64,000 nucleotides of DNA, from contig OZ037765.1 in the NCBI GenBank assembly GCA_964035545.1, positions 35,302,080-35,366,079 on the forward strand, written 5' to 3'. Positions 14,001 through 38,187 of this stretch are shown here, piece by piece. The stretch is from Bugula neritina. Its lineage: Eukaryota; Animalia; Bryozoa. The stretch's first letter is position 1; the number at the start of each line of letters is the position of its first letter. Below the pieces are notes generated by a model that was not told the DNA's origin, ran no database searches, and was given only the letters and a program-made list of their open reading frames with translations. Both the position numbers and the translations under genes were made by a program.

Positions 14001-14899
14001 GTAATGTTATAGTAATGTAATAGTTATATTTGGATCATTGTAAGTATTTCTGTTGTTGTACTGATTGATAAATATTTTTTAGCTTGCATGGATATTTGCA
14101 ACGATCAAGATGTCATTTGAACCTGGACTGGAATAAAGATGGCAAATCGAGAAGCTAGCTACAATTATTCTGCAGAAAGAAACTTGGTAAGCAAAAATAA
14201 GCTGCAGCAGTAAGCAATATGACGATGAACTTTGCTTGATTTTGATTGACCTTAAAATATCTGGTCACCTTTCAGCAACGTGGTCCTGCGCGGGTGGCTG
14301 GTGACCTTAAAATGTCTGTTGCACGTAAAATAAATTTTGTGACAGTCAAAAGTATGCTGATCTTTGTCTTAGCTTAAGAGCTGAACCCAACAATTATGAT
14401 CTAAAGCTGTTTTTTACTAGAAAGTGATTTTACTGTCTTTCTGATTATTCTTGGTTTTTCAGCTTGATGAATTGAATAAATGGATTTGATTTCGGGTATT
14501 ATGTAATGGATGAAAGAAATTTTTCTTAAATTTGTACTGAGCAATTTTTGCTATTGCTTTGATGTTTAGTGATAAAATTGCACCCTTAATAACCCTGAAA
14601 ACTTCCATTACTAGCATTTGTTTATGTTCATTTTTAGGAAATTAAAATGAAGACACAACTCACCGATGCTATCTCACTGTGGCTGCATGCAGTTTATCTA
14701 AAAAGGTACTCCTATTAGCTGGCTCTTGCCCAATACCTGGTTGTCTCTGTAACTATTTTTTGCTCGCAGATGAGTTTTTTGAACTTGACATTTTATTGAT
14801 TTTGAAAGTTATAGTGAGCTTTGAACTTGCTAGCATCGTTTTTAAAGACTTGCTGCAGTTTTTATCAACATTTTTTAAGTCAATGGTGTTAGTTTGGAA

Positions 14900-15170
14900 G
14901 CTCTCTCACTCCTCTCTCTGTCTCTTTCTCCCACACCTTCCACTCAACCTCTCTCTCTTTCTCCCCCTCTCTCCCACCCTCCCTCTCTCCCACCCTCCCT
15001 CTCTCCCACCCTCTGTCTCTCCCACCTTCTCTCTCTCCTAACCTTTCTCTCTTCCCTTTTCCACTATCTCTCTGACTCTCTCCCTTTCTCTCTTCTACCC
15101 CATCTCTCTTCCATCCTCTCTCCTAACTTTTCTCTCCCACCCCCCCCTCTCCCACTCTCTTTCTCTCTCT
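14900..15170. repeat. CT-rich polypyrimidine low-complexity tract
   Basis: Directly visible; explains the L/S/P-rich ORFs 14679-15172. Confidence 0.85.
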
Positions 15171-18100: not shown

Positions 18101-19104
18101 GCTAGAATATTCACATTTTTAGGTCTGCGTTTGCAAACATTGTTGTGTTACTTTACTTTTTATATTTTTTGAAATAAATATCTTTTTAGCTTGTGCCTAT
18201 TCATGATTAGAATAGTATAATAATATTTAACTTTTCTTCAATTTCAATAGATGAAAATGTTGATCAGTTGGAGTATTCAGTTTAGCTGAATTTTACTTGC
18301 TTCTGCGAAAAACAATCTTTTGGAGTTGTCTGCCCTCTCTTTAGGTAATTTTTTGACCTATGGTCAACGCAATAATTATAACTTTTTAAAGATGCTTGTG
18401 AACCTAACAATATAGCATAACTATCAAACCACATTATTCAATATCTGCATAAAATTTTGCCGATAATCTGCCACCCAATGAGCTTGAAAAGATATTAGAA
18501 TTCTAGCTCAGTGCTGCCATCAATGTAGATATTTATAATGATATAAAGCCAAAACTCATTATTTATAATGATATAAAGCCAAAACTCATTATTGCATGAA
18601 ATTATCTAACCATTCCTGACAAAGAATCGAGATAATAACTCCAAAGTTGGTCAGTTGAAACCACAGCAATAATATTTTAATCGTTATAATTGTCAGGTTT
18701 AATTTTATACCAAGCCCCAATAAGTACATATCACTATGACAACACAGCCTAAGCACCTCCAATGCAAGAAATTTAGTATTGTGGTGCTGCAAATCCTCCA
18801 GTTACAAATGAGTAGAGCTTTCATGATTATTGGTCTACCATAATGTTTATTTAGTTTTAAGGACTAGCATACATGCTATTATATGTGGGAGGTATTTGAA
18901 AAGCTTCCAACTCCATCTTCAACTACGGGCTATTATAATTATGCCGATAAACGAGATACTACACTCAGACTGCCCTGTTATAGTACTATGATTGGCTACT
19001 GCAAAATTTTTGCCGATAGACAACATTTAATTATGATGTAATGTATCTCGTATTGGTACATAAGTGTTATGTCTGAGGACGAGATACTGTGAAATTATGC
19101 CCTG

Positions 19105-19138
19105 ATTTTTTCATGCATGAGCTCATGCATGAAAAAAT
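19105..19138. repeat. Perfect 34-bp palindrome
   Basis: ATTTTTTCATGCATGAG|CTCATGCATGAAAAAAT. Confidence 0.9.
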
Positions 19139-19479
19139 GCATAATTTACTAGGAGAAAACTAAATGTGGGTATAAATGAACTTTTTTAAAAATGGTTTCA
19201 TTTCAGGTGATTGTGATGAATCTTATCCCAGTAAAAAGCTGAGACTTTTCTAATGTGATATATATATATAACAAAGTATGTAGGTGCTAAAAATATCAAG
19301 ATCATAGCTATTTGTAAAAGGTGAGTTTTAAGTGCCGGAGAATTGACGATTTTGAAAAATTACCAAATTTTTGGCCTAAAAACGCAATGCAACAGAATAT
19401 TTTTCTCAACACTTATGGCAGATTTTTTGCTTTTAGTTGAATAAAATCATGTAGAACTATCATCCATAAATGTATGAAA

Positions 19480-19709
19480 GGTTTGTATTGAATCGTCTCC
19501 GAGATATAAATCTATGAAGTTGACCTTCGGTACCGAAACCCATGAAAGAAGGACTGATTTTTTTACAAACCTTTGCTCACAAAAAGTGCCATAACTACAA
19601 AACTACCAGGAATTAAGAGCTAATATTTATTATTTTTTCATTTGACATGTTCTAGAATACTCTACTAAAATTTTGGTTTTGGCCTTGTTGAGTTGGCGTG
19701 GAATGACCC
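19480..19709. mobile_element. Probable single terminus of a GGG-ended DNA transposon
   Basis: Ends in ...GTTGGCGTGGAATGACCC (reverse complement GGGTCATTCCACGCCAAC, similar to the GGGTCA terminus at 7268). Homology with the paralogous LRR intron flanks starts immediately after 19709. No partner TIR found in the window. Confidence 0.45.
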
Positions 19710-19806
19710 ATACATCAATAAGAAACTTTATGCTAGAATTACATTTCCTTTTACTCTGATGGTTGTATTACTACATGATGTCTCAACTAGTATATGTTTA
19801 CTATAG

Positions 19807-19947
19807 CATGTCTAATCTGAAGAATCTGGATACTCTTTATATGTCAAAGAATAACTTCAGTGAAGGATTACCTGATGTATTCACATCAATGACATCTCTA
19901 AGAAAGTTGGATATTAGTCACTGTAACCTACCAACTCTACCTGAGAG
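19807..19947 (+). CDS. LRR cassette exon 1 (141 nt, phase 2-2, two LRRs)
   Basis: tatag|C ATG ... GAG AG|gttagt; MSNLKNLDTLYMSKNNFSEGLPDVFTSMTSLRKLDISHCNLPTLPE. Confidence 0.9.
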
Positions 19948-22900
19948 GTTAGTAAAAGCAAGCACCCTCCTAGTGTTTTGCCTCCATGTTTATAGACATG
20001 CATCTCCTGTTGCTATGTATTGTTAAAATTATTACAAATTTCTTATTTTGTATTTAAAGTTAACCAACAATCTAGAATTTACCTGTATGTTTTGAGACTT
20101 ACATTTTTTTTGCTATAAAAAATCTGTGAAAATTTCTCAAATCTGTTGAAAGTTTGCTTATCTGATGTATACAATATGCAAATAAATATAAGCTAATAAA
20201 GAGATGCTATGTAATATTATGACATGTGGTTATATGGAATATATAAGAAATGTTCCAATATTCTAATTTCCTATAATGCTTGAATTAAGTAGAAGCTATA
20301 GTAAGCTGAGTTTATTAGACTTTTCTTGTAAAATAAAAAGCTTGAGCTTTATTATGTAATATCCTGCAGACTAAAATCAGGTTCTGATCTAGCAATATAT
20401 AATGTATAGTTGGTATCTAAATAAGTTATATACAGTCGTTTGTTATACTATAAGCAGTAATAACCTTTAATTGAAATGTTATAAATAATAAATTTGTATT
20501 TTGAAGTATGAAACAAAATTGAAATATTTTAGCAAGTGTCTGTAACTATGACAAATATTATTATATATAAAAATATAAATGCATAAACTGTGAAGGGTAT
20601 ATACTTTGTATTCAGCTTGGTGTTGAAAAAAATAACTCATGGAGTACATTTCACATGTATATGTAATATTTATTTATATCTACTGCAGTAGATATAAATA
20701 AATATTACATATACATGTGAAATACACCTCATGAGTTCTTTTATTTTCAAAACCAAGCTGAATACAAACTCGATACACTTCACATGATGTCTTTTATTCC
20801 AACTTCATACTCCATTGAATGAATTTTATATATCAATAATAAACTTTATGCTAGAATTATATTTCCGTTTACTCTGATGGTTGTATTACTATACATGATG
20901 TCTCAACTAGTATATGTTTACTGTAGCATGTCTAACCTGGAGAATCTGGAGACTCTTGATATGTCATGGAATAACTTCAGTGAAGGATTACCTGATGTAG
21001 TCACATCAATGAAACCTCTAAGCTTGTTGCTTATGTCTCACTGTAACCTACTAACTCTACCTGAGAGGTTAGTAAATGCAAGCACCCTCCTAGTGTTTTG
21101 CCTCCATGTTTATAGACATGCATCTCCTGTTGCTATGTATTGTTAAAATTATTGCAAATTTGTTATTCTGTATTTAAGGTTGACCAACAATCTAGAATTT
21201 ACCTGTATGTCTTCAGACTTACATTTTCTTGTTGCTAACTAATCTGTGAAAATTTTTCAAATCTGTTGAAAGTTTGCTTATCTGATGTATACAATATGCA
21301 AATAAAGAGATGCTATGTAATGTTATGACATGTGGTTATGGAATATATTGTGGTGGTTCGTGGAACTACCAGCAGCACAACATGTAGGGTCGCGTAATTG
21401 ACCCGGAACAATGGATAGCCAATTAGCGTAGTTGATAGTTAGCAGCAATTATAGTTTCCCGCTGTTAAGTCAGTCGAAGCTAGAGTGTGAAATAGATTAG
21501 ATGTGTAACTTGTTTGAATATAATGTATTGTTTTTATAATGTATAATTGTGTGTAAAATATACTCGTTCACTCGACTTATCCTGGTGTAGTTCTATAGCA
21601 AATAAATAGACTCTCTAGATAGCACATCAACCCTAAATCTGAAAATCATAACAGTGGTGGCAGCGCTGGGATAGTGCATCCAAGATGGAGACTGAAAATG
21701 CTGGAACTCAACCACCGGCAATAGAAGGTGAGCGTAGAGACAATGCTGTAGAGACAATGCCTGTTAACCATGTAGTAGAAGAGCGAAGGGTTCCGCGAGA
21801 ACTAGCTGAGGACCGCTACAGGTTAAAGGCGCCCACCTTCACGGGTGAAGAGGAGGTGGAACAATTTATCCAAGAGTTTAGCGACGTAATGGACGTCGCC
21901 CAGTGGCCCCCTAGGGTGGCCTTGCTGAAGCTTAGAATGGCATTGATGGACAAAGCCAAGCCTTATGGGCTGGGCGTAGACATTGATAATATCTTTGCTT
22001 CTCTGCAGGCCCGCTTCGGCCTCTCTGCTACAGATGCCAGGGCCCGATTACAGAGGTTGCGGCGTGATCCCCGCACCCCGCTGCGAGAGCATGCCGCTGC
22101 GGTCATGAAGCTGGCACAGATCGCCTACAGCGACTTGCCCCCAGTCAACCGCGAGAGGTATACCCTCGTTGCTTTCATAGCATCTGTCGACGATCTGGGT
22201 CTCCACCATCAGTTTCTAGCTAGGGGAGTCACCACCGTTGAAGATGCTCTGACTGAGGGGGAAGCTTACCTCCTAGCTAATCAAATGCATAAAAGTCGCG
22301 GAAGCTCCCGTCAAGTGGAGATAGACCGCGCAGACACGGCCGCGGGACAAGGGGAGGAAACCCCCGCCGCGGCTGCCGTGTCCCAGTTGGCGATGGCATC
22401 CAAAGTCACTCAACTGACAGACATGCTAGCCAAGCTGATAGCAACACTGACACCAAAAAAAACCCAGTGAGTACCGCCCCTGAGCCCATGCGGCCATCGG
22501 CGCCGCCACAGGGAGAAACGGTCAGTTTTTGCTGGGAGTGCGGAAATCAAGGGCATTTCCGCCGATATTGTCCCTTCCTAAATCAGGGGTTAAACTACCG
22601 CAGCCCGCAGATGTTCCCACCTCCTGCGGGCCGATGATGAAACTCCCAGGGAAGAAGAAACGCAGGTCACCCAGACGGGTACCGCGTACTGGTAACCAAC
22701 AGTGGCAACAGCCACGACGGACCAGCAAGGGGCTTCGCCCCGCGGCTGCCTTTTCTATGCCCCTTCACAACAGATTCACAGGGCTACGAGTCCAAGAATC
22801 TGGATGGGAGCCCACGAAGGTAGCCGGGGATCTAACCTCGGCACCCCCGAGGCCTACCTACCACCGCCCCAAGAGACCTCCTTCGCGACCCAAAGCGAGG

Positions 22901-25900
22901 GAGGTACTCCCTGCGAGAGTAGGGCCTGAAGAGAGAGTTCAGGTGCAGCCCCATGGGAACAGCTATTTCTTGCCCGGTAAACTAGAAGGCAAAGCTGTTA
23001 CTTTCCTCATTGATTCGGGCTCTACCACAAACCTCTTAAGCCGCCAACTCTTCGACACCCTCAGTGCTAGGGTCAGGGGCGAGATGGAATCATACGAAGG
23101 GGAATACGGCACCCTAGCTGACGGGTCGTGCCATCCCTTCTATGGTATAATTGAGCTGACGGGACGAGTCCGTGATCAAACGATCCAAGAGACGTTCATC
23201 GTCAGTCAGCTCAAGGAGGACGCCATCCTCGGGATGCCAATCCTAAAACGGCACGGATGTCACATAGATTTTAACAAATCTGCAATGATGATGTTCGGGC
23301 GGGAACTCGCCTGCGTCGACAAGTTCGGCCGCCCTTTAGTGGGAGGTGTGCAAGTGGTACGCAACCGTATCATACCAGGCCGCTCCCGGGCTACCATTCA
23401 CTGCGGATCTCTGGACTCGGGGTAGTTGAAGGCGCGCACGAAAAGATCCAACTTGCCAGCAGTCTGAATCAGCTGACTGAGCAAGGGGAGATCTTAGTGC
23501 AATGCGTCAACCCCTTTGCCGAGCCTATCAAGCTCTAGGCTGGGTCGATGCTGGGCCGTTTTCACTTTGTTCAGGAGGAAGACGTAGGCCCGTCGCTGGG
23601 TGATGCGACAGAGGCACTCCCTCAGTGCCCTACTCAAGGGCGAGGGGCAGTCCCCGCACATCTCTGGGAGTTGTATGACACAGCCTGTAGCGGCTGCGCG
23701 AGTAACAGAGAACGCCGAGTTATGGCTAAGTTACTACGCGACTACGGTGATGTGTTCAGCAGCGGAGAGCATGACGTGGGACTGACTGGAATTGTCAGAC
23801 ACGAAATACCGCTGACTGCAGGGACAGTCCCTGTCCGGCAGCCCACACGCAGGCTGGGGCCGGAGAAAGAGAAGGAGGTTAGCCGACAAGTACGGGATCT
23901 TCTAGACCGGGGACTGATAGAGCCCGCCCATAGCGCGTGGAGCTCGCCAGTCGTACTGGTCCAAAAGAAAGAGGGCAGTTGGTGGTTCTGTGTGGATTAC
24001 CGCAAACTCAATAGCGTAACCATACAGGACGCCTACCCTCTACCTCGTATTGACGAGTCATTGGACGCCCTAGCCGGCAGCAAGTACTTCAGTACGTTAG
24101 ACTTGCTAAGCGGCTATTGGCAAGTTCCTCTGAGTCCCGACGCCCAAGAGAAAGCAGCGTTTATCACACGGGACGGTTTGTGGAAGTGGAAGGTGCTGCC
24201 TTTCGGGTTGACCTCCGCCCCAGCCACCTTCCAGAGGCTGATGGAGCAAGTCCTCAGCGGGCTCCATTGGAAGACACTGCTGATCTACCTCGATGATGTC
24301 ATCGTGATCTCCCCAGACTTCGAGAGACATGTCAGTCGTCTGCAGGAGGTCTTTGAGAGACTCCGAGGTGCCGGTCTTAAGCTCAAGCCTTCTAAGTGCG
24401 CTCTATTGCAGCCAGAGGTTAAGTACCTGGGGCACGTTGTCGGTCAAGATGGCGTGGCAACGGATCCCGAGAAGGTAGGGGCAGTAGAAGACTGGGTCAC
24501 CCCCCAAGACTTGACCGGACTCCGGGCTTTCTTGGGGCTGGTAGGGTATTACAGACAATACATACCAGACTTTGCGGGCATAGCACAGCCGTTAAACCGG
24601 CTCACCGCAAAGGGAGTAACGTGGCAGTGGACCCCAGTCGAACAAGAAGCGTTCGACCGCCTCAAGGGCTGCCTACTAACGGCGCCCATCTTTGCCTACC
24701 CAGACCCCACTCTGGAGTACATCCTCGACACGGACGCCAGTGACCAAAATATTGGCGCTGTGCTGTCACAAGTGCAGGAAGGCCGAGAAGTAGTAGTAGC
24801 CTACTACAGCAAGTCTCTCTCACCCATTGAACGAAATTACTGCACTACCCGCAAGGAGCTGCTGGCAGTAATAAAGTCAGTGAAGCACTTCAGACCATAC
24901 CTATATGGCAGGAATTTCCGGCTGCGTACGGATCATGCCTCGCTGATCTGGTTGTGCAAGAGAGCAGAGCCCTCTAGTCAGGTCGCCCGGTGGCTCGAAA
25001 TCCTAGCTGAATTCTCATACCGGATCGAACATCGACCGGGCAAGAGACACAGCAATGCGGATGGGTTGAGTCGCCGACCTGACGGAAGTTGCAAACAGTG
25101 TCTCAACATCGAGAGGAGGGATGGAGGTCCCCCGCGATGCGAGTTGGAGACGCTGGCTCATCACGGAGCACCGTTTGACTGGGACCAAGGTCAACTCAGG
25201 CCAAGAGTTGATGAGTCCCCGGAGGATGTACAAAACCTCCGCGCCAACCCTGTACTGGCCGGTAATGTTCGAGAGCTGAAGAAGCTCCAAGAAGAGCTGC
25301 CTGGAGTCGTGGCAGACATATACCGGGCCAAAAGGGAAGGGCGCAACCCAGCGAGGAACGCATACGACAGGGATGCGCCGAGTTCCGGCTATACTGTCAG
25401 CGTTGGGACTCGCTGCGGATCGGGCAGGATGGGTTACTAACCATCTCTCTAGCTGCCAGCGGCAGACACCCGGAAAGGAAGAGGGTAGTCTGCCCCACGG
25501 CCATCCGCCGTGAGTTGATTTGGGATACCCACAAACAGGCCCACGCAGGGGTCAAGAGAGTGATATCCAAATTATGACTCCGGTGGTATTGGCCACAAAT
25601 GGAGCGTGACGTCCGGCTCAGAGTCAAACAGTGTGAGATCTGCCAGGCCAGTAAGCATAGCCGCCCCCCTGGTGAAGCAGGACGGCGGAGGCTATATGCT
25701 GGTAGGCCCTGGCAAGTAGTCGCTGTAGACCTGGTCGGACCCATGCCCCTGACCCCCAGAGGCAATAATTGGATCCTAGTACTAACCGACCACTTTACTA
25801 GGTGGGCGGATGCTCTGGCTATCCCAGATGCATCAGCCCCAACAGTGGCCAGGGCACTAGACCAACATGTATTCTGTTATTTTGGGCTTCCCGAACAGAT

Positions 25901-28900
25901 ACACTCTGATCAAGGCGCTCAATTCCAGTCTCAACTGATGAGCGACCTTTGCCACCTCTGGGGAGTAAATCAGAGCAGGACCACCCCCTACCACCCTCAA
26001 GGTAACGGGGTGGTGGAGCGCAACAACCGGATGCTAGGTGATGCACTCCGGAGTCTCCTCCTTGGACGAGGTCAAGAGGAATGGGATACGGTGTTGCCGC
26101 AAGTCATGCGTGCATACCGTAGCACCCCACACACCAGTACTGGTGAGACCCCAAACCTCTTGATGCTCGGGAGAGAGACTCGTGTCCCTGACCATCTCAC
26201 CTATCACGTTCCAGAGCAAGACAACTCGGTTCACGAGTATGCCAGTGAACTAGTGGAACGGATGAAGGCCGCACACGATATACTGCGCCAACAGCAGTGG
26301 AAGGTGCGGCACGAAGATTCCGATGAACCACCTCTCTATCAAACGGGAGATAAGGTGTGGATGGTCAATTACGGTAGGCGTCGCGGACAGGCTGATAAAC
26401 TGAAGCCTAAGTTCGTAGGCCCCTACGTGGTCGTCGAGGCTATGCCCAATCATACGTACAAGATCGAGCGCTCAGGACAGGTGTCTATCCAGAATGAGTC
26501 TCGCTTGAAACCGTATTGGGCTAGCCCCGACGGAGTGGGAGAAGCCCCCCCGTTGTAGAGCCCAGGAGGCAGACAACGACGCGCGGGCGACGGCGGCATG
26601 GACCTGAATACGAAGTGGTCATACCGCGGGAAAAAAACTTGGTGAGAGAGGAGCGGCAGCTTTTGTCAACAGAAGCGTGTCCGCCACCGCCAAGTCTAAT
26701 TCCATCACTTCCAGCAACCGAACCGGTTCCGGAAGTGCAAACCCCCACGGAGGGAGGGGCTCCATCCGGAGAACAAGAAGAGGTGACCGCTAACGGTGAA
26801 GTAGAGACGCCATTAGAGGCCCCTACTAACGAACCGGCAAGCGTGTCACCCCCCTAGAAAGGGGACAGCGTACGAGGCAACCCCCCGCATACTTGAAGGA
26901 CTTCATATGCGACTGCGTTAAAAGCGGCGTGTATGAAAGTCTAGGGGAAAACCGTACGAGAAAAGTATCGAGCAAATGTGGGAGTTGTCAACACCACGGA
27001 AATATCAACTTTTGTATCGGCGGAAATAGAAACAAAATTCATCCGCCGGGTGCACAAAGTCTTAATCACGCACCCCAACCACGTTGCTCGATCTTTTCAT
27101 ACGCTGATGCAGTCAGGAGTAGACGTGTTTCTAAGCAGTAGTTCAAACCATTTCACACATTCAGTATGTCTTACAACAACAGATCGTGGGGTGAGTTAAC
27201 TATATCTTAATACGAAACTAGATTGCATCGCTCAGCTCTGACTCACTGAGTCAACCGAGCTGGAGATAGGTTAGTGAAATACCGTAGTAAGAACTCAGTT
27301 TGACTTAGAGATTTTTATAATCTCATTGCAATACGTGTTCTATCTGACTATTCACTACCATAATCTCTACGAGGTAACTGAATTAGGAGTTGCCAAGCTA
27401 TTTAAGCTGACAACACGGCAGTGTACTGTATTAACACTGTTGAAACTTTTTCAGATTACACTCGACCCGCTACAACCAGGGTACGGGATAGAACACTTCC
27501 CGCTCCGCATCCGGAGGAGTATGCTAGTGGTGACCGGCCTGAGCCACTACGCCGCCGTTGGCGGTGGGTGTCTCCACAAACAGAGGAAGAAATAGAAACG
27601 GCCTGGGGGTCCAGAGGACGGACGAGATGCCAGATCTGTGGTGAAGATTGCGCCTCTCACCGCTCCCTTAAACTACACGTCAATGCTCATCTCCTACTAA
27701 CATTCTGCCCCTGCGGGTACAATGATGTGTATCTCTACCCCGTCACCAGACACCGAGCGACGGGCTGTTTCCCTGGAGAAAACTACGTGGTCGACGCTAA
27801 GCTATACCCGGAGTTCCTCACACTTATACGACCTCTGGTGAAGAAGGCCATGCTGTTAGCCGTTCTGTCCTCGGGATTCCAACGTGTGTTAGACAACGCC
27901 CGCCAACAATCCCCGTTGGTGTCTGACCGCCCTCAAATTACATACACCCCCGAGGAAATTACATATACAGAAGAAGGAGAGATCTCCCCTACCCCGACGA
28001 AGAGACGAACCAGGTCCCCCAGTCCACCCTTGCGCCGCAGACGGACACCGTCCCCAGACCCAGTCCGCCTAGCCACAGCAGAAGAACGCCTCCTGCGATT
28101 ACAAGAAGAATTCACCCAGCTGGCACCAGATCTACTTAACACTACAACAGGACTCTTCCAGCTAAAGGGATCCGTATGCCGTATGAAACGGAAACTGCGT
28201 ACATGCCAAGCCAAGCACCGGCGTGCCCAACAAGGACTCTAGTTAGACTACCCGGAGTACTCCAACTTCGCCTCTTGGGGGAAACCAAGATGTCATGTAA
28301 ACGTTTGACTGCTTAACAGGTTATCCCCTGTCTAACACCACAGCTAGCTAGTATTCCTCGTCTATCTACAGCTGGCCAATTGTATGCAACGGATCGTTAT
28401 AATGACTCTGTCTATTATTATGTCTCTTCCTGTATATTATGTGTTATTTTTGTCCACTGATGTATGCGGTTACTAATGAATGTTTTTTTTATATATATAT
28501 CAGAAAGATGGCTTTCTGCTGGTGGGGGCGGTGTGGTGGTTCGTGGAACTACCAGCAGCACAACATGTAGGATCGCGTAATTGACCCGGAACAATGGATA
28601 GCCAATTAGCGTAGTTGATAGTTAGCAGCAATTATAGTTTCCCGCTGTTAAGTCAGTCGAAGCTAGAGTGTGAAATAGATTAGATGTGTAACTTGTTTGA
28701 ATATAATGTATCGTTTTTATAATGTATAATTGTGTGTAAAATATACTCGTTCACTCGACTTATCCTGGTGTAGTTCTATAGCAAATAAATAGACTCTCTG
28801 GATAGCACATCAACCCTAAATCTGAAAATCATAACAATATAAGACATGTTCCAATATTTTAATTTCGTATAATGCTTGAATTAAGTAGAAGTTATAATAG

Positions 28901-31900
28901 TAAGCTGAGTTTAGTAGACTTTTTGTGGAAAATAAAAAGCTTGAGCTTTATTATGTAATATCCTGCAGACTAAAATCAGGTTCTGATCTAGCAATATATA
29001 ATGTATAGTTGGTATCTAAATAAGTTATATACAGTCGTTTGTTATACTATAAGCAGTAATAACCTTTAATTGAAATGTTATAAATAATAAATTTGTATTT
29101 TGAAGTATGAAACAAAAATGAAATATTTTAGCAATTGTCTGTAACTATGACAAATATTATTATATATAAAAATATAAATGCATAAACTGTGAAGGGTATA
29201 TACTTTGTATTCAGCTTGGTTTTGAAATGAAGGACTCATGCAGTATATTTCACATGTATATGTGAGATTCGTATCTACTGATGTCTTCTATTCCAACTTC
29301 ATACTCCATTAAATGAAATTTATTATATATCAATGGGAAACTTTATGCTAGAATTATATTTCCTTTTACTCTGATGGTTGTATTACTACATGATGTCTCA
29401 ACTAGTATATGTTTACTATAGCATGTCTAATCTGAAGAATCTGGAGACTCTTGATGTGTCAGAGAATAACTTCAGTAAAGGATTACCTAATGTAATCACA
29501 TCAATGACATCTCTAAGAGAGTTGAATATTACAGAATGTGAACTACCAACTCTACGTGAGAGGTTAGTGAAACCAACTTCATCTGAAATGTTCATTCAGT
29601 AATTTCAAAGAATTATTGAATTATATAATTCAATAATTAGACATACAACTATAATAATAAATACAATTTGCTTTTAGTTTTACAAATACATTTCATTGAA
29701 TTCAAAATATGTTTTTATACTTATTATATTATATTATATTTAATTGCATCAATTATTTTGTTTTATTATAATATTTTATTGCATCGTATCTCAATTATTA
29801 TATTATATGTTTGTTATATGTTTACTGATGTCTTCTATTCCAACTTCATATTCCATAAAATGAAATTTATCATATATCAATAGGAAACTTTATGCTAGAA
29901 TTATATTTCTATTGCTTTAGATGGTTGTATTACTACATGATGTCTCAACTAGTATATGTTTACTATAGCATGTCTAATCTGAAGAATCTGGAGACTCTTT
30001 ATATGTCAGTGAATAACTTCAATGAAGGATTACCTGATTTAGTCACATCAATGACATCTCTAAGGAAGTTGGATATTAGAAACTGTAAACTACCAACTCT
30101 ACCTGAGAGGTTAGTGAAAGTAACTTCATATGATATGTTTATCTAGTAACTCCAAAAGGTATTTTTGACTTCTATAATTTTGATCAGGCATCTATGATTA
30201 TAATAGCGGATGAAATGTGTTTGTATATAGTTTTACTTCATACAATCATCTTTCTTTGTAAGTTTGAGTGCTTTTTTATCTAGTGTGTTACATATTATTA
30301 TATTACACTGTATTATACTATTTTATACTACACTATATTGCATTACATTATATTATAATTATATATATTATGTTATATTATAATATAATATTAGAGTATA
30401 ATTATCTTCACTATCATATATGCTGACTCTAGCATTTCTATAGTACATTGTATTATATATTATATTGTAATATAATCAATTACACTATACTATATTATTT
30501 CAATACGATGTAATATAATATATTACTATTAAATTTTATACTGTATTATAATATATTTTACTGTATAATGGTACACTATACTATAATATATTATAACTCA
30601 ACTAGTATATGTTTACTATAGAATGTCTAATCTGAAGAATCTGGAGACTCTTGATATGTCAAAGAATAACTTCAGTAAAGGATTACCTGATGTAGTCACA
30701 TCAATGACATCTCTAAGAGAGTTGAATATTAGTCACTGTAACCTACCAACTCTACCTGATAGGTTAGTAAAACTAATTTTATATGAAATTTTCATTCAGT
30801 AATTTCAAAGAATAATTGAATTATATAATTCAATAATTAGACACACAACTATAATAATAAATATATTTTATTCAATTCAAAATATGTTATTATATTTAAT
30901 ATATTATATTATATTTAATTACATCAAATATTTTATTTCATTATAATATTTTATTATATTGCATCGTATCTCAACTAGTATTTTATGTGTTTACTGTAGC
31001 ATGTCTAATCTGAAGAATCTGAAGACTCTTGATATGTCAGGGAATAACTTCAGTGAAGGATTACCTGATGTAGTCACATCAATGGCATCTCTAAGAGAGT
31101 TGAATATAGAGACCTGTGAACTACCAACTCTACCTGAGAGGTTAGTAAATGCAAGCACCCTCCTAGTATTTTGCTTCCATGTTTATAGACATGCATCTCC
31201 TGTTGCTATGTACTGTTCAAATTATTACAAATTTCTTATTCCATATTTAATGTTAACCAAAAAGATCCTAAACAATGTTTTAACTCAAAAGAAATATCAC
31301 GTTATATATGCTACTCTTTTAACTTATTCCATAAAAAGCTGCATATATCCTGTTACATGATGTCTCAATCAGTATATGTTATAATATATATATTCATATA
31401 TTACATATGATGTCTCAACTAGTATATGTTTACTACAGCATGTCTAATCTGAAAAATCTGGATACTCTTAATATGTCAGGGAATAACTTCAGTGAATGTG
31501 AAGGATGCAGGATGTAGGATGTAGTTCTGCATTAGAAGTACTTATCCTACATTCCCCTCCCTTCAAACGACATCACAATTACTATAAGACACCAAATTAT
31601 CATAAGCAAATTCTATGGATTAAAATACTAATATACATATAATTATCATTAATGCAGTTATATGTCACAAGGAAACCTCATCTCCATGCTTTTTAGAGAG
31701 AAAACAGTTGCATTAAGGGCAGAATTCATCAAGTTGTATTTTATTGCATGTAACACCTAAGGATTTATCTATCACAACAGCTGTATACAGATGTAATTCT
31801 TTAACTGACAAATTTGAGAAAATTTTCTCATTCTAAATCTACAAACATGTTTACAAACTAATAGATATATCAAATTAATATAGGCTAATTATATGCAGCC

Positions 31901-34900
31901 TTTAATCAGATGAAATACTAAAATGTAAAATTATTATTATTATTATTATTGTTATTATTATTATTGTTGTTATTTTAACATGATGCGAAAAAACTTGGTC
32001 TTTATTTTTTTTCAAATAAAATAGTTGGGTTTAATTTATTAAATTATATTTTGTAATATTTTGTTGTATTTAGTTTACTTCCAAGTGGCGCAGGAGCACT
32101 TCTATAGTAAAACAGTTATTAGGAGTTGTCATTTCTTAAATGACGTGTTTAAGAAAAGTTGCCTGTGATAAGTATGCAGACATTTCGCAAATTCATAACA
32201 GTCTGAATAAGTGTTGAGTTGAGGTTGTAAGACTTTTCTAAACATTTTCAAAAGCTGTAACCAGAAGGAGTATATTTGCTGAATTCTGACTTATAATAAT
32301 ATATGTTTTATCTTAATTGCAGTTTGAAGTATTTGGAGAATCTGGAAGATCTGTATATTCAGAATAACAACTTTACTACAATTCCAGAGGCTGTCTGCAA
32401 CTTGAAGAAATTACAAGTGATACAGGTTGATGGATGCAAGTCTTTAACCACTCCCCCTTATGAAGTCTGCACCAGAGGATTGCCAGCAATCAGACAGTAT
32501 TACAGAGATCTTGCTAAAGGTGAAGGTGAAAGTCTCCCACTAGTCACCATTGCAGTGATTGGTAACACAATGGCAGGGAAGACAAGTCTCATCAGAACAT
32601 TGCAGAGTGAAGAGAGAAAGAGAGTGCTGACAAATCGTGGACCTGAGGCTGCCGTTGATGAAACAACTAAAGTCTTTAAAGTTGAAGAGTTGAAAGTGCA
32701 CAACACGCTTCTGAGACTAATTGACCTGGGAGGACAACCAGTGTACCACATGACGTACCAGCTTACACTTAAACAGAACTGCATCCCAATAGTAGTGGTG
32801 AACATGGAGCAGTATCATCAGCTGGCAGAAAAGAAGGGAAACAGAGAGGCTGTGAAAAGACTGGCTTTTGATTGGCTGGCTCATTTGTACGTGGCAAACC
32901 CTGGCATTGGACCACCAAAACTTGTGTTTACTCACAAAGACAAGTTTGATGAGGATAATTTCACAAAGATGACTACTGCTTTTACCAGCACAGCTGATCT
33001 ACTGAAAGATGAAATTATCAGAGAAGAGAAAAAACTTGACCAAAGCATAGCAAAGATAGAGCACTTCCATCAACACAGAGAGCTGTTCTCGCAAGAAGAT
33101 ATCTACTCAGTTGGAAAAGAAGATAATTATCAAACATACGAAGTCATGAAAACTGCCATTTTCAGGTCAGCTCAAAATTTTGTGAAAGTGTTGCCAAAGC
33201 TATGGGAAGATGTGAATGAGAAAGTCTTGGGATTACAGACAGCATTCAGTACACTTGATGAGATAATTGATACAGTGCTGCAAGTAGATGAAACCATCAC
33301 ATCTGATCAGCTTGCCATAATCCTCATCTACATGCATGATTGTGGTAAAGTCTTGTGGTACAAGGATATCCAGGAGTTGAACCAAATTATTTTTCACAAG
33401 ATTGAGGAAGTAACTAAATTACTCACAGTCTTGTTTCATCACGATGAAGATGTGTGGCAGACACGGCAAGCAAATTTTGAACCACCTCTTCTGACTAACG
33501 GAGCTTTTCTTGAGAAAGAACAGTTTGAGAATTCCATGGAGATTTTCTTGTCAACAGGAATCATGGAGAGCCAACTTCTAGAATATTTAATCAAAGCTGA
33601 GACAGCATTCTCCGATGAAAATGCACATCAACTTGCTGCTACTTTGCTGCAGAAATTCAGCATTCTGTACGGACCAGTTGATCGAGATTCAAAAAGCTGT
33701 TTCATTGTTCCCTTCTACTCCCCTGATTACCTAGAGAACACTCTCACTACTGATCAAGACATCATTCTCCATGCTGAGATCATGTTCAAAGGTCTCTCAA
33801 TCCCACAATATGTCTACCAACAGATGAGTGTTGTTGTCCTACGAATGTTCCCAGATGAGACAAGTGCTCCCCTCGTTACAAAAAATGGTGTAAAGGTTTT
33901 TCACAATGATGTCTCGGTGCGCCTTGTCCATGATGGCCTATCAAGGAAGGCAGATGTTACAGTGTCTGGAGCAGCAGAGAAAATCACAGATTGTTGGAAG
34001 CACATGGTCAGCATAACCAGGAAAATATCCAATGAGATCTACAGTTCATGGCCTGCCAGCAGAATGGTCCACAAGTCTAGTTGTACACACTGCATATTGA
34101 AAGGTGAATCCAGTCCTAAGGTTCAGGTAACTCCCAAATGGTGTGTCGACTTTCAAACGGAGACACCTTATGAGCAGTTCCAGAAGGAGATAGTGACAGT
34201 TCTTTGTAGAGGAGATAAGATCCTAAGCCCATTCATGCACCCATGTAAGTTAAGTTGGTGCGATAAAATAGTTCTGTAAGTTGAGAACTTAAAATATCTA
34301 AGTGTAGATAATATGTTGAATTTTGTTGGCAATCTTAGCTAGCTAAATTATGCATTTAAAATTTTTAAATAAATCAGGGTAACTAAAAGTATTTATGTTT
34401 TATGGGCTTTGTCTATTTATGATAATTATTGTTTATAAAATTGGGTGCAGCAACTTTTTTTGTTAACAAGAGAAGAATTGTTTATCATTCACTAATAAAA
34501 CTTGAAGTTTAATTGTAGGCAAGCCTTTCACTAAGTCTAAACTAAAGGAACTGAAGGCAATGCTGAAAAAGTTAAAGATGCAGCAGAAGCATTGGAAGAA
34601 AGAGACAGATGAATCAGGTATACTATACACTCAAGACTGAAGTGTCCTGCAGTTGTGTCTCCCTGAAGATCTAGAAAGGAAGTGATGTATTAAACAGACA
34701 GATAAAGTGTAATATGTTACAGAGACAAGCAAGCCCACACTCACTATATCTATAGCTCCTCTCCTACGACCAGCAGTACAGCAGACTGTGACAGACGGAG
34801 AGAGTGACCTCTCTGATGATGATGACTACATGGAACCTGCTGATGACCCTGACAGACAACTGGTATCTCTCAGACAGGCAGTTCTACCAACTACTAGGAA

Positions 34901-37177
34901 GGGCATTCGGAGATTATTCTACAACACAGATAAAGTGTGACATCACAATATCTTCTCAATAATACTTTGGTTATCTTATATGGCTACGGCTCTACACTAA
35001 CAATTAACACACATTTTATAAACCTTGACAAATATTGATTATGTATTTAGGTTAAAATTTTTCGGCTATTTATATGATTAAAAAAAGTGGCTTTTAGAAT
35101 GAATATACATGTTTAGAAAATCACATAGAGCACCATCTCTCTGCACAATTATGCCGGAACTATGCTAAAGTTTTCTCAGATTAGGAAGTTATAATACACT
35201 AGCTGTTTGATAGTTTGAAACACTGTTCCTATTATATAGGCCAGTTTAACTGACTTAAAACTTTCTATGTGTCTGTTCCATTTTAATTTTATTGTTTAAT
35301 CACAAAAACATTTCAACTATCCAAAGGTTTTACAAGACCAAACAAGTAGATCAAGTGTTTATATAATTAAGATTCAATGATTACTGACTGCAGGTGTTTC
35401 TAATGACAAAGAACAGAGGAAGAGCTCTGATAATCAACAACAGAGAATTTTCCAATTGCCAGGAAAGACTTGGCTCTGATGCTGACGTTAGAAATCTTGA
35501 AGAAATGTTAGAAACATTCAAATTTGCCACCAAGGTTTTTGAGGAAATCAGCGCTGAGGTAACAGGATATCTGTAAATTATAGAGACTAAATTGAGTGAT
35601 GATTAAAATGTCGATGGTGAATTTTTCGAAGAGTAGGAGAAAAATCATAGGATGAATTATTTTTGCATATTTTTTACAAGTCAACAGTTTTATGTGACCC
35701 AATTCTAAGATGCATCAAGTTACATAAATTCACTGCATACTTGAAATAATGGTGAACTTAAAGTTAACTGCAGTTCCAACTAGCAGAGAGAATTAAATAT
35801 GTTTATAGGACATGTTGCATGTGATAAAGAATGAGGTTGAAAACAGACATCATGCTGAGTCTGGAGTATTCTGGTTGGCTATTCTAAGTCATGGAACTGA
35901 GGCTAATCACATCTATGGCTCTGATGGTGTTCTGGTTAACCTAAAGGATGTCTATGATCTTCTTTCACCAATAAACTTTCCTCTAATGGCTGAGAAGCCA
36001 AAGATAGTCGTGATTCAGGCCTGTAGTGGAAGTGAGTATCACATAATATCTATATAACTATTTGCCTCTATAGAACCTTATTACTACAATGAGCTCATCT
36101 GAAGACTTTTGGGTAAATCAGAAAAGTGTAACTATATTCAGTACTGTTCATCTCCAATACGTTTGCTAGATAGAGTAGATGGAGGCGGGAAAGGAATATT
36201 TCCAGCCAATCAGAATGATAATACAGTTACTGACCAACATTTGGTAGTCAAAGCTGTCAGATCAGCAGCTGGAGAACCTTTGGGAGGAGACAGATTAGAG
36301 AAACTCAACTGTGACAATCTGTTAATATTAAAGTCCAGCTTTGAATGTAAGTAAATAGCATATTCTTTCTCTAAACATGACAAAATTAGTTCTGCATATA
36401 ACAATAAGCAAATAATTTATTTGTACAGTTTTCTAAAAAAGAAATGAATCCAGACTCTACCAGATTCAGGGAATTTAGAAAATGAATAGAATATTTGAAA
36501 GTGGAAGAATCAAATAATATTATGACTTTACAAAATATTGGCAGTCTCGAAATTACTTTGTCTTTTAGTCCCGCATTTAGTTCATAGCCAAATAATAGCT
36601 ACATAACATTTTATGCTGAAAAGACATTTTCCCTACATTTCCTAATATTATATTTTTAAGATTTGTGTTGCAGCATATGTGTCTAGACGTCACCCTGTTT
36701 ATGGATCTCTAGCAATTAGATGTCTGGTCCAAACTATGTACAGGCACGCATGCCACAGACATGTCTATAAAATATTTAGGATTGTAAGTATATATATCAG
36801 AGAAAAACAGCATGTATTGGTATTTGCATATGTGAACATACATCCGATAAACTTAATTTAATTGCTTGGCTGTCACCAATTCTTATGTTTATCTGCAGGT
36901 ACAGCACAGGGTGAGAGAGTTTTGCATTCAGAGAAACCTTGAGAATGGTCAGACAGTCATTGCTATAAATACTCTGACACACATGAGAAAACTCTACCTG
37001 TTTCCTGGATACAATGGCTTTACAAGGAACTCTGAACGATCAAGTAACATGAGACAACAAGTAGAGAGAGAAGTAGAATCAAGTAGCCTCAAGCAACCAG
37101 CAGAAAGAGAAGCAGAGGCAAGTAGCAACACACAACAGCTTGTAGAGAGAGGACCAGAAACAAAAGTTAAACAGTAA
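19807..37177 (+). CDS. LRR-ROC-COR-caspase fusion protein (ROCO family with C-terminal caspase). 14 visible coding exons; 5' end uncertain
   Basis: Exons 19807-19947, 20927-21067, 29422-29562, 29969-30109, 30622-30762, 31000-31140, 32323-34244, 34519-34617, 34723-34934, 35394-35558, 35809-36031, 36170-36346, 36674-36783, 36899-37177. All are AG/GT-bounded with matching phases. 4032 nt from ATG 19808 to TAA 37177 = 1343 aa, with no internal stop by my reading. Confidence 0.88.
20927..21067 (+). CDS. LRR cassette exon 2
   Basis: tgtag|C ATG ... AG|gttagt; MSNLENLETLDMSWNNFSEGLPDVVTSMKPLSLLLMSHCNLLTLPE. Confidence 0.9.
21349..21653 (+). repeat. 5' LTR
   Basis: TGTGGTGG...CATAACA, 305 bp; AATAAA at 21601. 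Confidence 0.95.
21655..21672 (+). promoter_or_regulatory. Primer-binding site, tRNA-Leu type
   Basis: TGGTGGCAGCGCTGGGAT, 1 nt after the LTR. One mismatch to the complement of the tRNA-Leu(AAG/TAG) 3' end (TGGTGGCAGCGGTGGGAT). Confidence 0.8.
21685..22637 (+). CDS. gag: Gypsy gag; CCHC knuckle lies in the -1 frame after an A8 run
   Basis: ORF 21685-22470 has capsid-like motifs (PTFTG...EQFIQEF...W). The -1 frame after the A-run at 22455-22462 encodes CWECGNQGHFRRYC and ends at TGA 22635-22637. Confidence 0.8.
22529..26558 (+). pseudogene. pol: Gypsy pol (protease, RT, RNase H, integrase), disrupted
   Basis: Protease LIDSGS; RT YLDD and LPFGL; RNase H DTDAS...KELLA; integrase HHCC and D..D..E (VDLVGP, HSDQG, VERNNR) with GPY. 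Frame breaks near 23405 and 25345; in-frame stops TAG 23536 and TGA 25575. Confidence 0.93.
27421..28242 (+). CDS. Extra ORF3 of the Gypsy element: C2H2 plus C2HC zinc fingers, R/S/P-rich linker, coiled coil
   Basis: CQIC-x12-HVNAH and CPC-x12-H-x4-C; RRTRSPSPPLRRRRTPSP; heptad-like C-terminus. The ORF has no ATG start; there is a candidate acceptor ttttcag at 27448-27454. Confidence 0.7.
   Translation: MYCINTVETFSDYTRPATTRVRDRTLPAPHPEEYASGDRPEPLRRRWRWVSPQTEEEIETAWGSRGRTRCQICGEDCASHRSLKLHVNAHLLLTFCPCGYNDVYLYPVTRHRATGCFPGENYVVDAKLYPEFLTLIRPLVKKAMLLAVLSSGFQRVLDNARQQSPLVSDRPQITYTPEEITYTEEGEISPTPTKRRTRSPSPPLRRRRTPSPDPVRLATAEERLLRLQEEFTQLAPDLLNTTTGLFQLKGSVCRMKRKLRTCQAKHRRAQQGL
28521..28531 (+). 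promoter_or_regulatory. Polypurine tract
   Basis: GGTGGGGGCGG directly before the 3' LTR. Confidence 0.7.
28532..28836 (+). repeat. 3' LTR
   Basis: 305 bp; 302/305 identical to the 5' LTR by eye. Confidence 0.95.
29422..29562 (+). CDS. LRR cassette exon 3
   Basis: MSNLKNLETLDVSENNFSKGLPNVITSMTSLRELNITECELPTLRE; same splice sites and phase. Confidence 0.9.
29969..30109 (+). CDS. LRR cassette exon 4
   Basis: MSNLKNLETLYMSVNNFNEGLPDLVTSMTSLRKLDIRNCKLPTLPE; same splice sites and phase. Confidence 0.9.
30622..30762 (+). CDS. LRR cassette exon 5 (absent from the ORF track)
   Basis: tatag|A ATG ... GAT AG|gttagt; MSNLKNLETLDMSKNNFSKGLPDVVTSMTSLRELNISHCNLPTLPD. Confidence 0.9.
31000..31140 (+). 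CDS. LRR cassette exon 6
   Basis: MSNLKNLKTLDMSGNNFSEGLPDVVTSMASLRELNIETCELPTLPE; same splice sites and phase. Confidence 0.9.
31439..31517 (+). pseudogene. Truncated seventh LRR cassette (pseudo-exon)
   Basis: Intact acceptor tacag|C ATG, then MSNLKNLDTLNMSGNNFSE. Homology then breaks, giving CEGCRM* (TAG 31515-31517). Confidence 0.8.
32323..34244 (+). CDS. Large exon: terminal LRRs, LRR cap, ROC GTPase and COR
   Basis: ttgcag|T TTG (phase 2, compatible with the cassettes). LRRs LENLEDLYIQNNNF and LKKLQVIQVDGC; cap PPYEVC..G..AIRQY; P-loop VIGNTMAGKTSL; G3 DLGGQ..Y; G4 VFTHKD; COR motifs PKLW, YMHDCGKVLWY, FIVPF; late CTHC. Donor T|gtaagt. Confidence 0.93.
34519..34934 (+). CDS. Two linker exons (34519-34617, 34723-34934): basic helix then acidic linker
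   Basis: CKPFTKSKLKELKAMLKKLKMQQKHWKKETDES / ETSKPTLTISIAPLLRPAVQQTVTDGESDLSDDDDYMEPADDPDRQLVSLRQAVLPTTRKGIRRLFYNTDK. Phases 1-1 and 1-0 bridge COR to the caspase in frame. Confidence 0.75.
35394..37177 (+). CDS. Caspase (peptidase C14A) domain, five exons
   Basis: RGRALIINNREF...ERLGSDADVRNL; catalytic His in ILSHG; KPKIVVIQACSG (catalytic Cys); small subunit YVSRRHPVYGS...NTL...KLYLFPG. Confidence 0.93.

Positions 37178-38149: not shown

Positions 38150-38187
<38 letters not shown>

What the first reader, a model, noticed from the sequence alone, without database searches (positions are those of the whole stretch)
19807..31140. Array of symmetric 141-nt LRR cassette exons, hypervariable at the ligand-binding face
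Seen: six 141-nt exons (47 codons, 24+23-aa LRR pair), all phase 2-2 with near-identical splice sites, so any can be skipped, duplicated or swapped without a frameshift. By my manual alignment about 22 of 46 codons vary in amino acid, but only about 3-4 silent differences exist (AAT/AAC, AGA/AGG, ATT/ATA, AGT/TCT). The most diverse sites are x positions of LxxLxLxxN/C: codon 14 K/W/E/V/K/G; codon 37 S/S/T/R/S/E; codon 38 H/H/E/N/H/T; codon 40 N/N/E/K/N/E; codon 11 Y/D; codon 33 K/L/E; codon 35 D/L/N. Established: these positions form the concave binding surface diversified in plant NLRs and lamprey VLRs, and LRR exon shuffling is described for brown algal (Ectocarpus) ROCO genes. Inference: diversifying selection on a modular recognition repertoire in an animal ROCO gene, possibly extended by alternative splicing or copy-number variation.
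Basis: partly seen in the sequence, partly recalled or inferred. Interest (0 to 1): 0.9.

Follow-up and report, generated by a model that had tools for sequence, protein, structure and literature searches.

The report
Fast-evolving LRR exon cassettes, bryozoan ROCO-caspase
Six interchangeable 141-base exons build the sensor arm of a moss-animal (bryozoan) gene that joins leucine-rich repeats, a GTPase switch and a caspase. Their predicted binding-face codons change about three times faster than neighbouring intron DNA, as in immune receptors, but whether cells mix the exons by splicing could not be tested.

Summary
Six 141-nt exons lie at 19807-19947, 20927-21067, 29422-29562, 29969-30109, 30622-30762 and 31000-31140 (+). 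All have AG|..|GT borders and phase 2-2. Among them 22 of 46 amino-acid columns vary, with 4 silent variants.

The array feeds an exon encoding LRR, Roc and COR (32323-~34245), followed by caspase exons. The closest named relative is a Bugula neritina hypothetical protein.

I collected 59 intact cassettes from this and paralogous arrays. Site models reject neutrality: M2a vs M1a gives 2dlnL=146, and M8 vs M7 gives 165. The selected sites are 11, 14, 25, 33, 35, 37, 38, 40 and 42. In independent close pairs, the xxLxLxx codons chosen in advance differ at 23-26% per nt, against 8-9% in flanking intron. Synonymous change matches the intron rate. Cassettes 1 and 2 are a 1.1-kb tandem duplicate: the intron is 4.9% diverged and the exon 12.8%.

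Watersipora subatra has the same 141-nt exon design.

Diversifying selection is supported. No 5' end of the gene was found in the window.

This scan has reported the same gene family several times on other DNA of this genome.

The parts
19807..19947 (+). LRR cassette exon 1 (141 nt, two LRRs of 24+23 aa, phase 2-2)
   Evidence: AG/GT borders and single open frame. Pfam LRR_1 31.5 bits and LRR_8 31.8 bits. Cassette HMM 105 bits. 96% identical to the last cassette of the array 34 kb upstream.
20927..21067 (+). LRR cassette exon 2, the most diverged copy
   Evidence: It is part of a 1.1-kb tandem duplicate of unit 1. The exon is 18/141 diverged and the intron 42/854 (Fisher p=0.0009).
21349..28836 (+). 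Gypsy-type LTR retrotransposon inserted in intron 2, same orientation as the gene. It is a passenger, not part of the receptor.
   Evidence: 305-nt LTRs with 3 mismatches and a 4-nt target duplication ATAT. Protease, RT, RNase H and integrase matches. GC 52-57% against ~33% around it.
29422..29562 (+). LRR cassette exon 3
29969..30109 (+). LRR cassette exon 4
30622..30762 (+). LRR cassette exon 5 (split codon AG|A instead of AG|C)
31000..31140 (+). LRR cassette exon 6
31439..31497 (+). Truncated seventh cassette. It keeps the acceptor and the first ~19 codons, then diverges into stop codons with no GTTAGT donor. Likely a dead pseudo-exon.
   Evidence: HMM match to positions 1-19 only
32323..34245 (+). 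Large exon encoding the last LRRs, the Roc GTPase (P-loop GNTMAGKTS, DLGGQ, THKD) and COR. The acceptor is in phase with every cassette. The 3' border is approximate (first gtaagt before the stop).
   Evidence: ORF. Pfam Roc 29.3 bits (cut-off 27) and COR-A 20.3 bits (below cut-off). PDB sequence matches to Chlorobium and Methanosarcina Roco proteins. Sequence.
35394..36031 (+). Two caspase (Peptidase_C14) exons, about 35394-35558 and 35809-36031, with SHG and QACSG catalytic motifs. Borders were read by eye.
   Evidence: (38 and 48.5 bits, cut-off 21.4). A weak match to the later part of the Peptidase_C14 profile (positions 164-212 of 233) lies at 36646-36858.

Best explanation
The six exons are germline-encoded, interchangeable two-repeat modules of the LRR sensor arm of a bryozoan LRR-Roc-COR-caspase gene. 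This gene is one of a very large, clustered and partly subtelomeric family.

New modules arise by tandem duplication of exon-plus-intron units. This is shown for units 1 and 2.

After duplication, the leucine/asparagine/cysteine scaffold is kept by purifying selection. The solvent-exposed residues of the beta-strand and turn (positions 8, 11, 14 of the first repeat; 33, 35, 37, 38, 40, 42 of the second) are driven apart by positive selection. This is shown statistically.

The mechanism is inferred, not shown. The varied concave surface binds diverse ligands (microbial, viral or allogeneic). Binding flips the Roc-COR GTPase/dimerisation switch. That activates the fused caspase by proximity, giving a one-chain sensor-switch-executioner for immunity or cell death.
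For: Anatomy:
- Borders and frames of the six exons.
- Downstream Roc-COR and caspase exons.

Family size:
- At least 93 cassette candidates genome-wide.
- 62 full-length cassettes in the 267 kb I fetched, 59 of them intact.
- 328 first-look candidates for the Roc-COR region, many on C1 between 32.5 and 35.5 Mb of a 35.64-Mb contig.

Duplication: units 1 and 2 align over 1.1 kb once the retrotransposon is removed.

Selection:
- M0 omega is 1.24.
- M2a vs M1a gives 2dlnL=145.8, with 16.5% of sites at omega 4.75.
- For the 27 C1 cassettes alone, 2dlnL=127.9.
- M8 vs M7 gives 2dlnL=164.5.
- Face codons chosen in advance have omega 1.87 (p=0.002). Scaffold codons have omega 0.41 (p=0.0004).
- A tree-free test on 17 independent close pairs gives intron 8.3%, face codons 23.3% per nt (p=2e-22) and the rest of the exon 6.6%.
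- The result holds when conserved splice regions are excluded.
- It also holds with held-out intron columns (x3.0, p~1e-20).
- dS/K_intron is 1.04.
- Single-nt synonymous change at face codons is not elevated, which argues against a mutational hotspot.
- There is no recombination signal inside the exon (PHI p=0.98/0.42/0.65).

Conservation: the same 141-nt phase-2 design occurs in a Watersipora subatra LRR-Roc gene, varying at the same positions.
Against:
- No start exon was found in the window.
- Homology to the neighbouring array begins abruptly at 19092-19105. This copy may therefore be 5'-truncated, or may depend on an array 34 kb upstream.
- A sense-oriented 7.5-kb retrotransposon sits in intron 2.
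- The COR match is below Pfam's cut-off.
- Site 25 is selected by the models but is not on the concave face. It has essentially two states (F/V), so recurrent exchange may have inflated it.
- Per-site FEL-like tests reach p<0.05 at only 4 sites.
- Ligand, localisation and caspase activation are all inference.
Confidence: 0.78

Rival explanations
1. This copy is a broken or fragmentary gene. It would be a 5'-truncated duplicate of the neighbouring array fused to Roc-COR-caspase exons and interrupted by a retrotransposon. The signature of selection would then come from its functional ancestors and paralogues, not from present function here.
For: - No 5' exon in the window.
- Homology with array B starts abruptly at 19092-19105.
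- Array B has no Roc exon of its own.
- There is a truncated seventh cassette.
- There is an LTR retrotransposon in intron 2 with 99% identical LTRs.
- Cassette 2 has lost the conserved R32 and carries unusual residues.
Against: - All six cassettes, the 651-codon Roc-COR exon and the caspase exons are open. GTPase and caspase motifs are intact.
- All splice sites are kept.
- Cassettes B2-B7 and window cassettes 1-6 lie on the same strand and in the same phase. The 34 kb between them holds only LINE reverse-transcriptase remnants and simple repeats. They could therefore be one gene with a long intron.
Confidence: 0.3
2. The excess of amino-acid differences is produced by exchange (gene conversion or unequal crossing-over) of pre-existing variant patches among cassettes and arrays, not by positive selection on new point mutations.
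For: - Nearest neighbours of a cassette's upstream flank, downstream flank and exon usually differ and lie in different arrays. Only 2 of 40 are the same on both sides.
- Patches such as the second-repeat motif of cassettes 1 and 5 recur in cassettes with unrelated introns.
- Homoplasy is high everywhere.
Against: - Discordant flanks are also what simple tandem duplication of exon-plus-intron units produces.
- The PHI test shows no dependence of incompatibility on distance within the exon.
- Exchange only redistributes variants. The 11-12 different residues at positions 14, 37 and 38 still have to arise and be kept.
- Synonymous change equals the intron rate while nonsynonymous change at face codons is 3.4 times that rate.
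Confidence: 0.15
3. Relaxed constraint: the cassettes are redundant repeats drifting neutrally.
For: Outside the face codons dN/dS is about 1 (0.89-1.02). 3 of 62 cassettes carry a stop, a frameshift or an extra codon.
Against: - Neutral drift cannot exceed the intron rate, yet face codons are 2.7-3.0 times faster.
- Scaffold codons have omega 0.41.
- 59 of 62 cassettes are intact, with conserved splice signals.
Confidence: 0.04

Closest known systems
Brown-algal LRR-ROCO genes with shuffled LRR exons (Ectocarpus, Saccharina; PMC3341825, PMC11378527)
   Same: - LRR arm N-terminal to Roc-COR.
- LRRs encoded by tandem, equal-length, frame-symmetric exons.
- Variable exon number between paralogues.
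- M2/M8 positive selection at concave-face residues.
   Different: - Here each exon holds two LRRs (141 nt, 24+23 aa). In the algae it is one LRR of 72 nt.
- The host is an animal (bryozoan).
- A caspase is fused after COR, whereas the algal proteins described in these papers are LRR-Roc-COR.
- Alternative splicing is documented in Ectocarpus and untested here.
Exon-modular LRR domains of vertebrate NLRs such as NLRP3 (PMC6642158)
   Same: Strict exon modularity of the LRR domain allows in-frame skipping. The protein is an intracellular sensor coupled to caspase activation.
   Different: - The switch is a Roc-COR GTPase, not a NACHT ATPase.
- The caspase is in the same polypeptide instead of being recruited through adaptors.
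- The cassettes here are near-identical recent duplicates under strong diversifying selection.
Bugula neritina hypothetical protein EB796_002463 (P0030) and Watersipora subatra LRR-Roc gene (P0051, GCA_963576615.1)
   Same: - P0030 has LRR, Roc, COR-A/B and caspase, with 37% identity to the window's Roc-COR exon. Copies 85-90% identical to it exist elsewhere in this genome.
- P0051's gene has five 141-nt cassettes with the same phase and the same variable positions.
   Different: - Both are unannotated predictions, with no functional or evolutionary description in the held literature.
- The Watersipora donors are gtaagt or gtgagt, whereas here nearly all are gttagt.
Prokaryotic Roco proteins (Chlorobium tepidum Roco, PDB 3dpu/6hlu/8r4b) and LRRK2/DAPK1
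   Same: LRR-Roc-COR order. The Roc domain matches by sequence.
   Different: No kinase, a caspase effector instead, and a hypervariable cassette-built LRR arm.
Lamprey VLR and arthropod Dscam1
   Same: LRR (VLR) or tandem cassette (Dscam) modules that diversify a recognition surface.
   Different: - VLR cassettes lack splice sites and are copied somatically into an incomplete gene. Here every cassette is a normal exon in a collinear gene.
- Dscam uses mutually exclusive splicing with docking and selector RNA pairing, which was not examined here.

Membership tests
Leucine-rich repeat (Pfam LRR_1 / LRR_8) | LxxLxLxxN/CxL motif scoring above the curated cut-off | tested here: met
   Cassette 1 scores LRR_1 31.5 bits (cut-off 20.6) and LRR_8 31.8 bits (cut-off 27). 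It aligns in register with the LRRs of PEPR1 and MIK2.
ROCO proteins | Roc (Ras of complex) GTPase domain with P-loop, DxxGQ and xHxD motifs | tested here: met
   Pfam Roc 29.3 bits against a cut-off of 27. Motifs GNTMAGKTS, DLGGQ and THKD are in the ORF. PDB sequence hits to C. tepidum and M. barkeri Roco.
ROCO proteins | COR domain directly after Roc | tested here: inconclusive
   COR-A scores 20.3 bits at residues 291-463, below the 35.3 cut-off. The relative P0030 has COR-A 30.5 and COR-B 22.1, also below their cut-offs. Position and order fit, but no structural test was run.
Caspase (Peptidase_C14) | Domain match plus catalytic His (SHG) and Cys (QACxG) | tested here: met
   Two exons score 38 and 48.5 bits (cut-off 21.4). 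SHG and QACSG are present. A weak match to the later part of the profile lies at 36646-36858.
Brown-algal type exon-shuffled LRR-ROCO receptors | Tandem equal-length frame-symmetric LRR exons upstream of Roc-COR | tested here: met
   Six 141-nt phase 2-2 exons followed by the Roc exon.
Brown-algal type exon-shuffled LRR-ROCO receptors | One 24-aa LRR per 72-nt exon | tested here: not met
   Here there are two LRRs per 141-nt exon (PMC3341825 read).
Brown-algal type exon-shuffled LRR-ROCO receptors | Positive selection at concave-face residues (M2/M8) | tested here: met
   Intron-based test.
Brown-algal type exon-shuffled LRR-ROCO receptors | Alternative splicing of LRR exons | not testable with these tools
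VLR-type somatic cassette assembly | Donor cassettes without splice sites flanking an incomplete germline gene | tested here: not met
   All cassettes have AG/GT borders and lie collinear and in frame with the Roc exon.
Dscam-type mutually exclusive splicing | Docking and selector complementary intron elements | not tested
   I only saw that the last 40 nt of each upstream intron are 83-96% conserved. No complementarity search was made.

The most novel reading that the evidence does not exclude
The cassettes are not only a germline repertoire. Their uniformly weak GTTAGT donors and perfect phase symmetry would let individual cells skip or choose cassettes. One gene, and several hundred paralogues, would then yield many receptor isoforms. 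The family would serve as a variable one-chain sensor-GTPase-caspase system for pathogen recognition, or for colony self/non-self recognition, in bryozoans.
Probability: 0.2. Interest if true: 0.85.

Novelty: new variant of a known kind. Interest (0 to 1): 0.66.

Why it matters
LRR cassettes built from exons and evolving under diversifying selection in ROCO genes have been described only in brown algae. This locus shows the same logic in an animal, with a caspase fused to the switch.

That points to an unstudied class of candidate intracellular immune or cell-death receptors in a lophotrochozoan phylum whose immunity and colony allorecognition are almost unknown. The architecture is shared by at least two cheilostome families (a Bugula-like genome and Watersipora).

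The family is large enough for proper evolutionary, transcript and biochemical tests. The units 1/2 duplicate gives an unusually clean natural experiment: exon divergence is 2.6 times intron divergence.

Tried and rejected
No reads could be laid, so splicing, exon skipping and expression remain untested.
Only 267 kb of paralogous arrays were analysed.
- Search for a 5' exon gave nothing. I tried blastn and tblastx of the upstream regions against paralogues, a cassette HMM over six frames of the window and tblastn with relatives' N-termini.
- Selecting pairs on one flank and measuring the other gave about 21% 'intron' divergence. Many such flanks are not homologous, so I rejected this as a neutral yardstick and replaced it with held-out columns.
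- Flank and exon nearest-neighbour discordance looked at first like proof of shuffling. I rejected it as proof because tandem duplication of exon-plus-intron units gives the same pattern.
- The PHI test found no recombination signal within the exon.
- A phmmer search of 1.84 billion proteins with one cassette gave only generic LRR proteins at 52% identity or less. Among the few top hits I scanned, two LRR-Roc relatives (P0041, P0051) turned up.
No three-dimensional model of the LRR arm was made. Face positions were assigned from the LRR motif and from alignment to solved LRR receptors.


Full report
**Observation**

A direct-repeat search and a 24-nt core pattern find seven copies of one unit on the + strand between 19.8 and 31.5 kb. 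None is expected by chance. Six copies are complete 141-nt exons at 19807-19947, 20927-21067, 29422-29562, 29969-30109, 30622-30762 and 31000-31140.

Each is preceded by ..tactatag or ..tactgtag and followed by gttagt. Each is open in only one frame, starting at nt 2. That gives 46 full codons and a split codon AG|C (AG|A in exon 5), so the phase is 2-2. The next exon starts at 32323 and accepts the same phase (AG|T). Any cassette could therefore be dropped, repeated or swapped without a frameshift.

Two things were missed:
- A seventh copy at 31439 keeps only the acceptor and about 19 codons, then runs into stops.
- The long gap between exons 2 and 3 is a Gypsy-type LTR retrotransposon at 21349-28836. 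It has 305-nt LTRs with 3 mismatches, a target duplication ATAT, and protease, RT, RNase H and integrase matches. Its GC is 52-57% against ~33% around it.

**What the gene is**

Each cassette is a pair of LRRs of 24 and 23 residues (Pfam LRR_1 and LRR_8 above cut-off). The first repeat aligns in register with the 24-residue repeats of solved plant LRR receptor kinases.

The 1.9-kb exon at 32323 encodes two more LRRs and a Roc GTPase. Roc scores 29.3 bits against a cut-off of 27, and the motifs GNTMAGKTS, DLGGQ and THKD are present. A sub-threshold COR-A match follows. The Roc part matches the Chlorobium and Methanosarcina Roco structures by sequence.

Exons at about 35394-35558 and 35809-36031 encode a caspase with SHG and QACSG. 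A weak match to the later part of the caspase profile lies at 36646-36858.

**Organism and family size**

- The nearest named protein is a Bugula neritina hypothetical protein with LRR, Roc, COR and caspase, at 37% identity.
- Copies 85-90% identical to that protein occur elsewhere in this 216-Mb genome. The source is therefore a Bugula-like cheilostome bryozoan, though apparently not the sequenced B. neritina itself.
- That search gave 328 first-look candidates for the Roc-COR region. Many lie between 32.5 and 35.5 Mb of contig C1. C1 is 35.64 Mb long, and the window is about 275 kb from its end.

**Paralogous arrays**

In the 267 kb I could fetch there are 62 full-length cassettes, 59 of them intact, in arrays of 6 to at least 12. 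Several arrays have their own Roc-COR and caspase exons.

Array B ends 34 kb upstream of cassette 1. It has seven cassettes (one isolated, then six) and no Roc exon. Its last cassette and the 715 nt before it are 96% and 98.6% identical to cassette 1 and its upstream intron. The homology stops abruptly at window 19092-19105.

The 34 kb between holds LINE reverse-transcriptase remnants and AT-rich simple repeats, with no evident gene. I found no start exon in the window. Two readings remain: array B and the window array form one gene with a long intron, or this copy is 5'-truncated.

**How cassettes arise**

With the retrotransposon and one copy of its target duplication removed, unit 2 (exon 2 plus its intron) aligns end to end with unit 1 over about 1.1 kb. 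The intron differs at 42 of 854 aligned sites (4.9%). The exon differs at 18 of 141 (12.8%; Fisher p=0.0009). Nearly all exon changes alter the amino acid. The retrotransposon's LTRs are about 1% diverged, so it inserted after this duplication.

**Selection, tree-based**

- For the six window cassettes, NG86 gives dS 0.041, dN 0.149 and dN/dS 3.6.
- For the 59 intact cassettes, IQ-TREE gives omega 1.24-1.31. My own pruning code reproduces its log-likelihood exactly.
- M2a beats M1a by 2dlnL=145.8 (p=2e-32), with 16.5% of sites at omega 4.75.
- M8 beats M7 by 164.5.
- The 27 C1 cassettes alone give 127.9.
- Sites with posterior above 0.9 are 11, 14, 25, 33, 35, 37, 38, 40 and 42, plus 8 in the C1 set.
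- Seven of these are x positions of xxLxLxx. Sites 40 and 42 lie just after the Cys/Asn of the second repeat. Site 25 (mostly F or V) lies in the non-strand part of the first repeat.
- Site-by-site tests with a free synonymous rate have little power. They are significant at 16, 25, 38 and 42, and borderline at 14 and 35.
- Pooling the ten xxLxLxx codons chosen in advance gives omega 1.87 (p=0.002). The scaffold codons give 0.41 (p=0.0004). The remaining codons give 0.89.

**Selection, tree-free**

- In 17 independent pairs with alignable flanks, the intron differs at 8.3%, the ten face codons at 23.3% per nucleotide (p=2e-22) and the rest of the exon at 6.6%.
- Excluding the conserved splice regions changes little (8.8%).
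- Choosing pairs on half the intron columns and measuring on the other half removes selection bias. It still gives a threefold excess (p~1e-20).
- Synonymous divergence equals intron divergence (ratio 1.04). Face dN is 3.4 times intron divergence, with a bootstrap interval of 2.5-4.6.
- Among codons differing at a single base, synonymous change at face codons is no commoner than expected from the intron rate. A local mutational hotspot is therefore unlikely.
- A PHI test finds no recombination signal inside the exon.
- Upstream flank, downstream flank and exon often have different nearest relatives in different arrays. Tandem duplication of exon-plus-intron units produces the same pattern, so I do not count this as proof of shuffling.

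**Other features**

The last 40 nt of each upstream intron are 83-96% conserved across all 59 cassettes. The donor is GTTAGT in 49 of the 59, and 57 have T at +3. The other donors of the same gene have a purine at +3.

A Watersipora subatra gene (GCA_963576615.1) for an LRR-Roc protein has five 141-nt cassettes with the same borders and variation at the same positions. Its donors are gtaagt or gtgagt. The exon design therefore predates the split of these two cheilostome lineages.

**Comparison with what is known**

The closest described system is the brown-algal LRR-ROCO family. It has tandem 72-nt single-LRR exons, exon shuffling, positive selection on the concave face and, in Ectocarpus, alternative splicing (PMC3341825, PMC11378527). 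Exon-modular LRR domains that permit in-frame skipping are also known in human NLRs (PMC6642158).

Searches of the held literature found no description of a bryozoan or other animal LRR-Roc-COR-caspase family. I therefore file this as a new variant of a known kind.

It is not VLR-like: every cassette is an ordinary exon. Dscam-like selection of exons was not examined.

**Relation to earlier scan notes**

Notes of this scan report the same family at several other places in this genome and reach similar readings. One of them reports recombination among cassettes of another array. My PHI test on this set gave no such signal.

**Verdict**

The immune or cell-death receptor function, any role of alternative splicing, and the completeness of this particular copy remain inference.

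Noticed in passing
window 21349-28836: Gypsy-type LTR retrotransposon in intron 2, in the same orientation as the gene. It has 305-nt LTRs with 3 mismatches and target duplication ATAT. Long open frames carry protease, RT/RNase H and integrase, plus an unassigned 273-codon ORF at 27421-28242. GC is 52-57% against ~33% in the host DNA. Related copies lie beside other arrays.
   Followed up: partly
window 19948 and the donor of every cassette; 59 cassettes in the fetched loci: 57 of 59 cassette donors have T at +3, and 49 are GTTAGT. The other introns of the same gene, and the Watersipora cassettes, use gtaagt, gtgagt or gtaaca. A uniformly weak donor fits regulated or optional exon use, but it may simply be inherited by duplication.
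   Followed up: partly
window 20589-20784: A ~196-nt near-perfect palindrome in intron 1 (arms 20626-20685 and 20686-20745 at 90%; outer arms at 86%). In the duplicated unit 2 the region from mid-palindrome onward is missing (a gap of about 100 nt in the unit 1 / unit 2 alignment). It could be a foldback insertion or a hairpin-mediated deletion.
   Followed up: partly
window 42000-64000 (+), e.g. 43806-44099, 47344-47682, 53747-54037, 63396-63728: A downstream gene with at least four MAM-domain exons (Pfam MAM 27-42 bits). They are interspersed with Thr/Pro-rich (54752-55099) and Tyr/Ile-rich low-complexity stretches.
   Followed up: partly
window 8000-14000 and 37850-38620: The first is a very AT-rich block (GC 20-26%) of TA-type simple repeats. 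The second is a ~0.7-kb TG/CA-type microsatellite with strong GC skew, just after the caspase exons.
   Followed up: no
G000 contig C1, 32.5-35.5 Mb (the window is at 35.30-35.37 Mb of 35.64 Mb): Dozens of Roc-COR matches of this family crowd the last ~3 Mb of the contig. The family is concentrated in a terminal, possibly subtelomeric, cluster. Further clusters lie on C7, C8, C5 and C3.
   Followed up: partly
L051 (Watersipora subatra OY755161.1), 9259-28495: Five 141-nt LRR-pair exons of the same phase are spread over 19 kb of a 37-kb LRR-Roc gene. A caspase-bearing gene model overlaps the same locus.
   Followed up: partly
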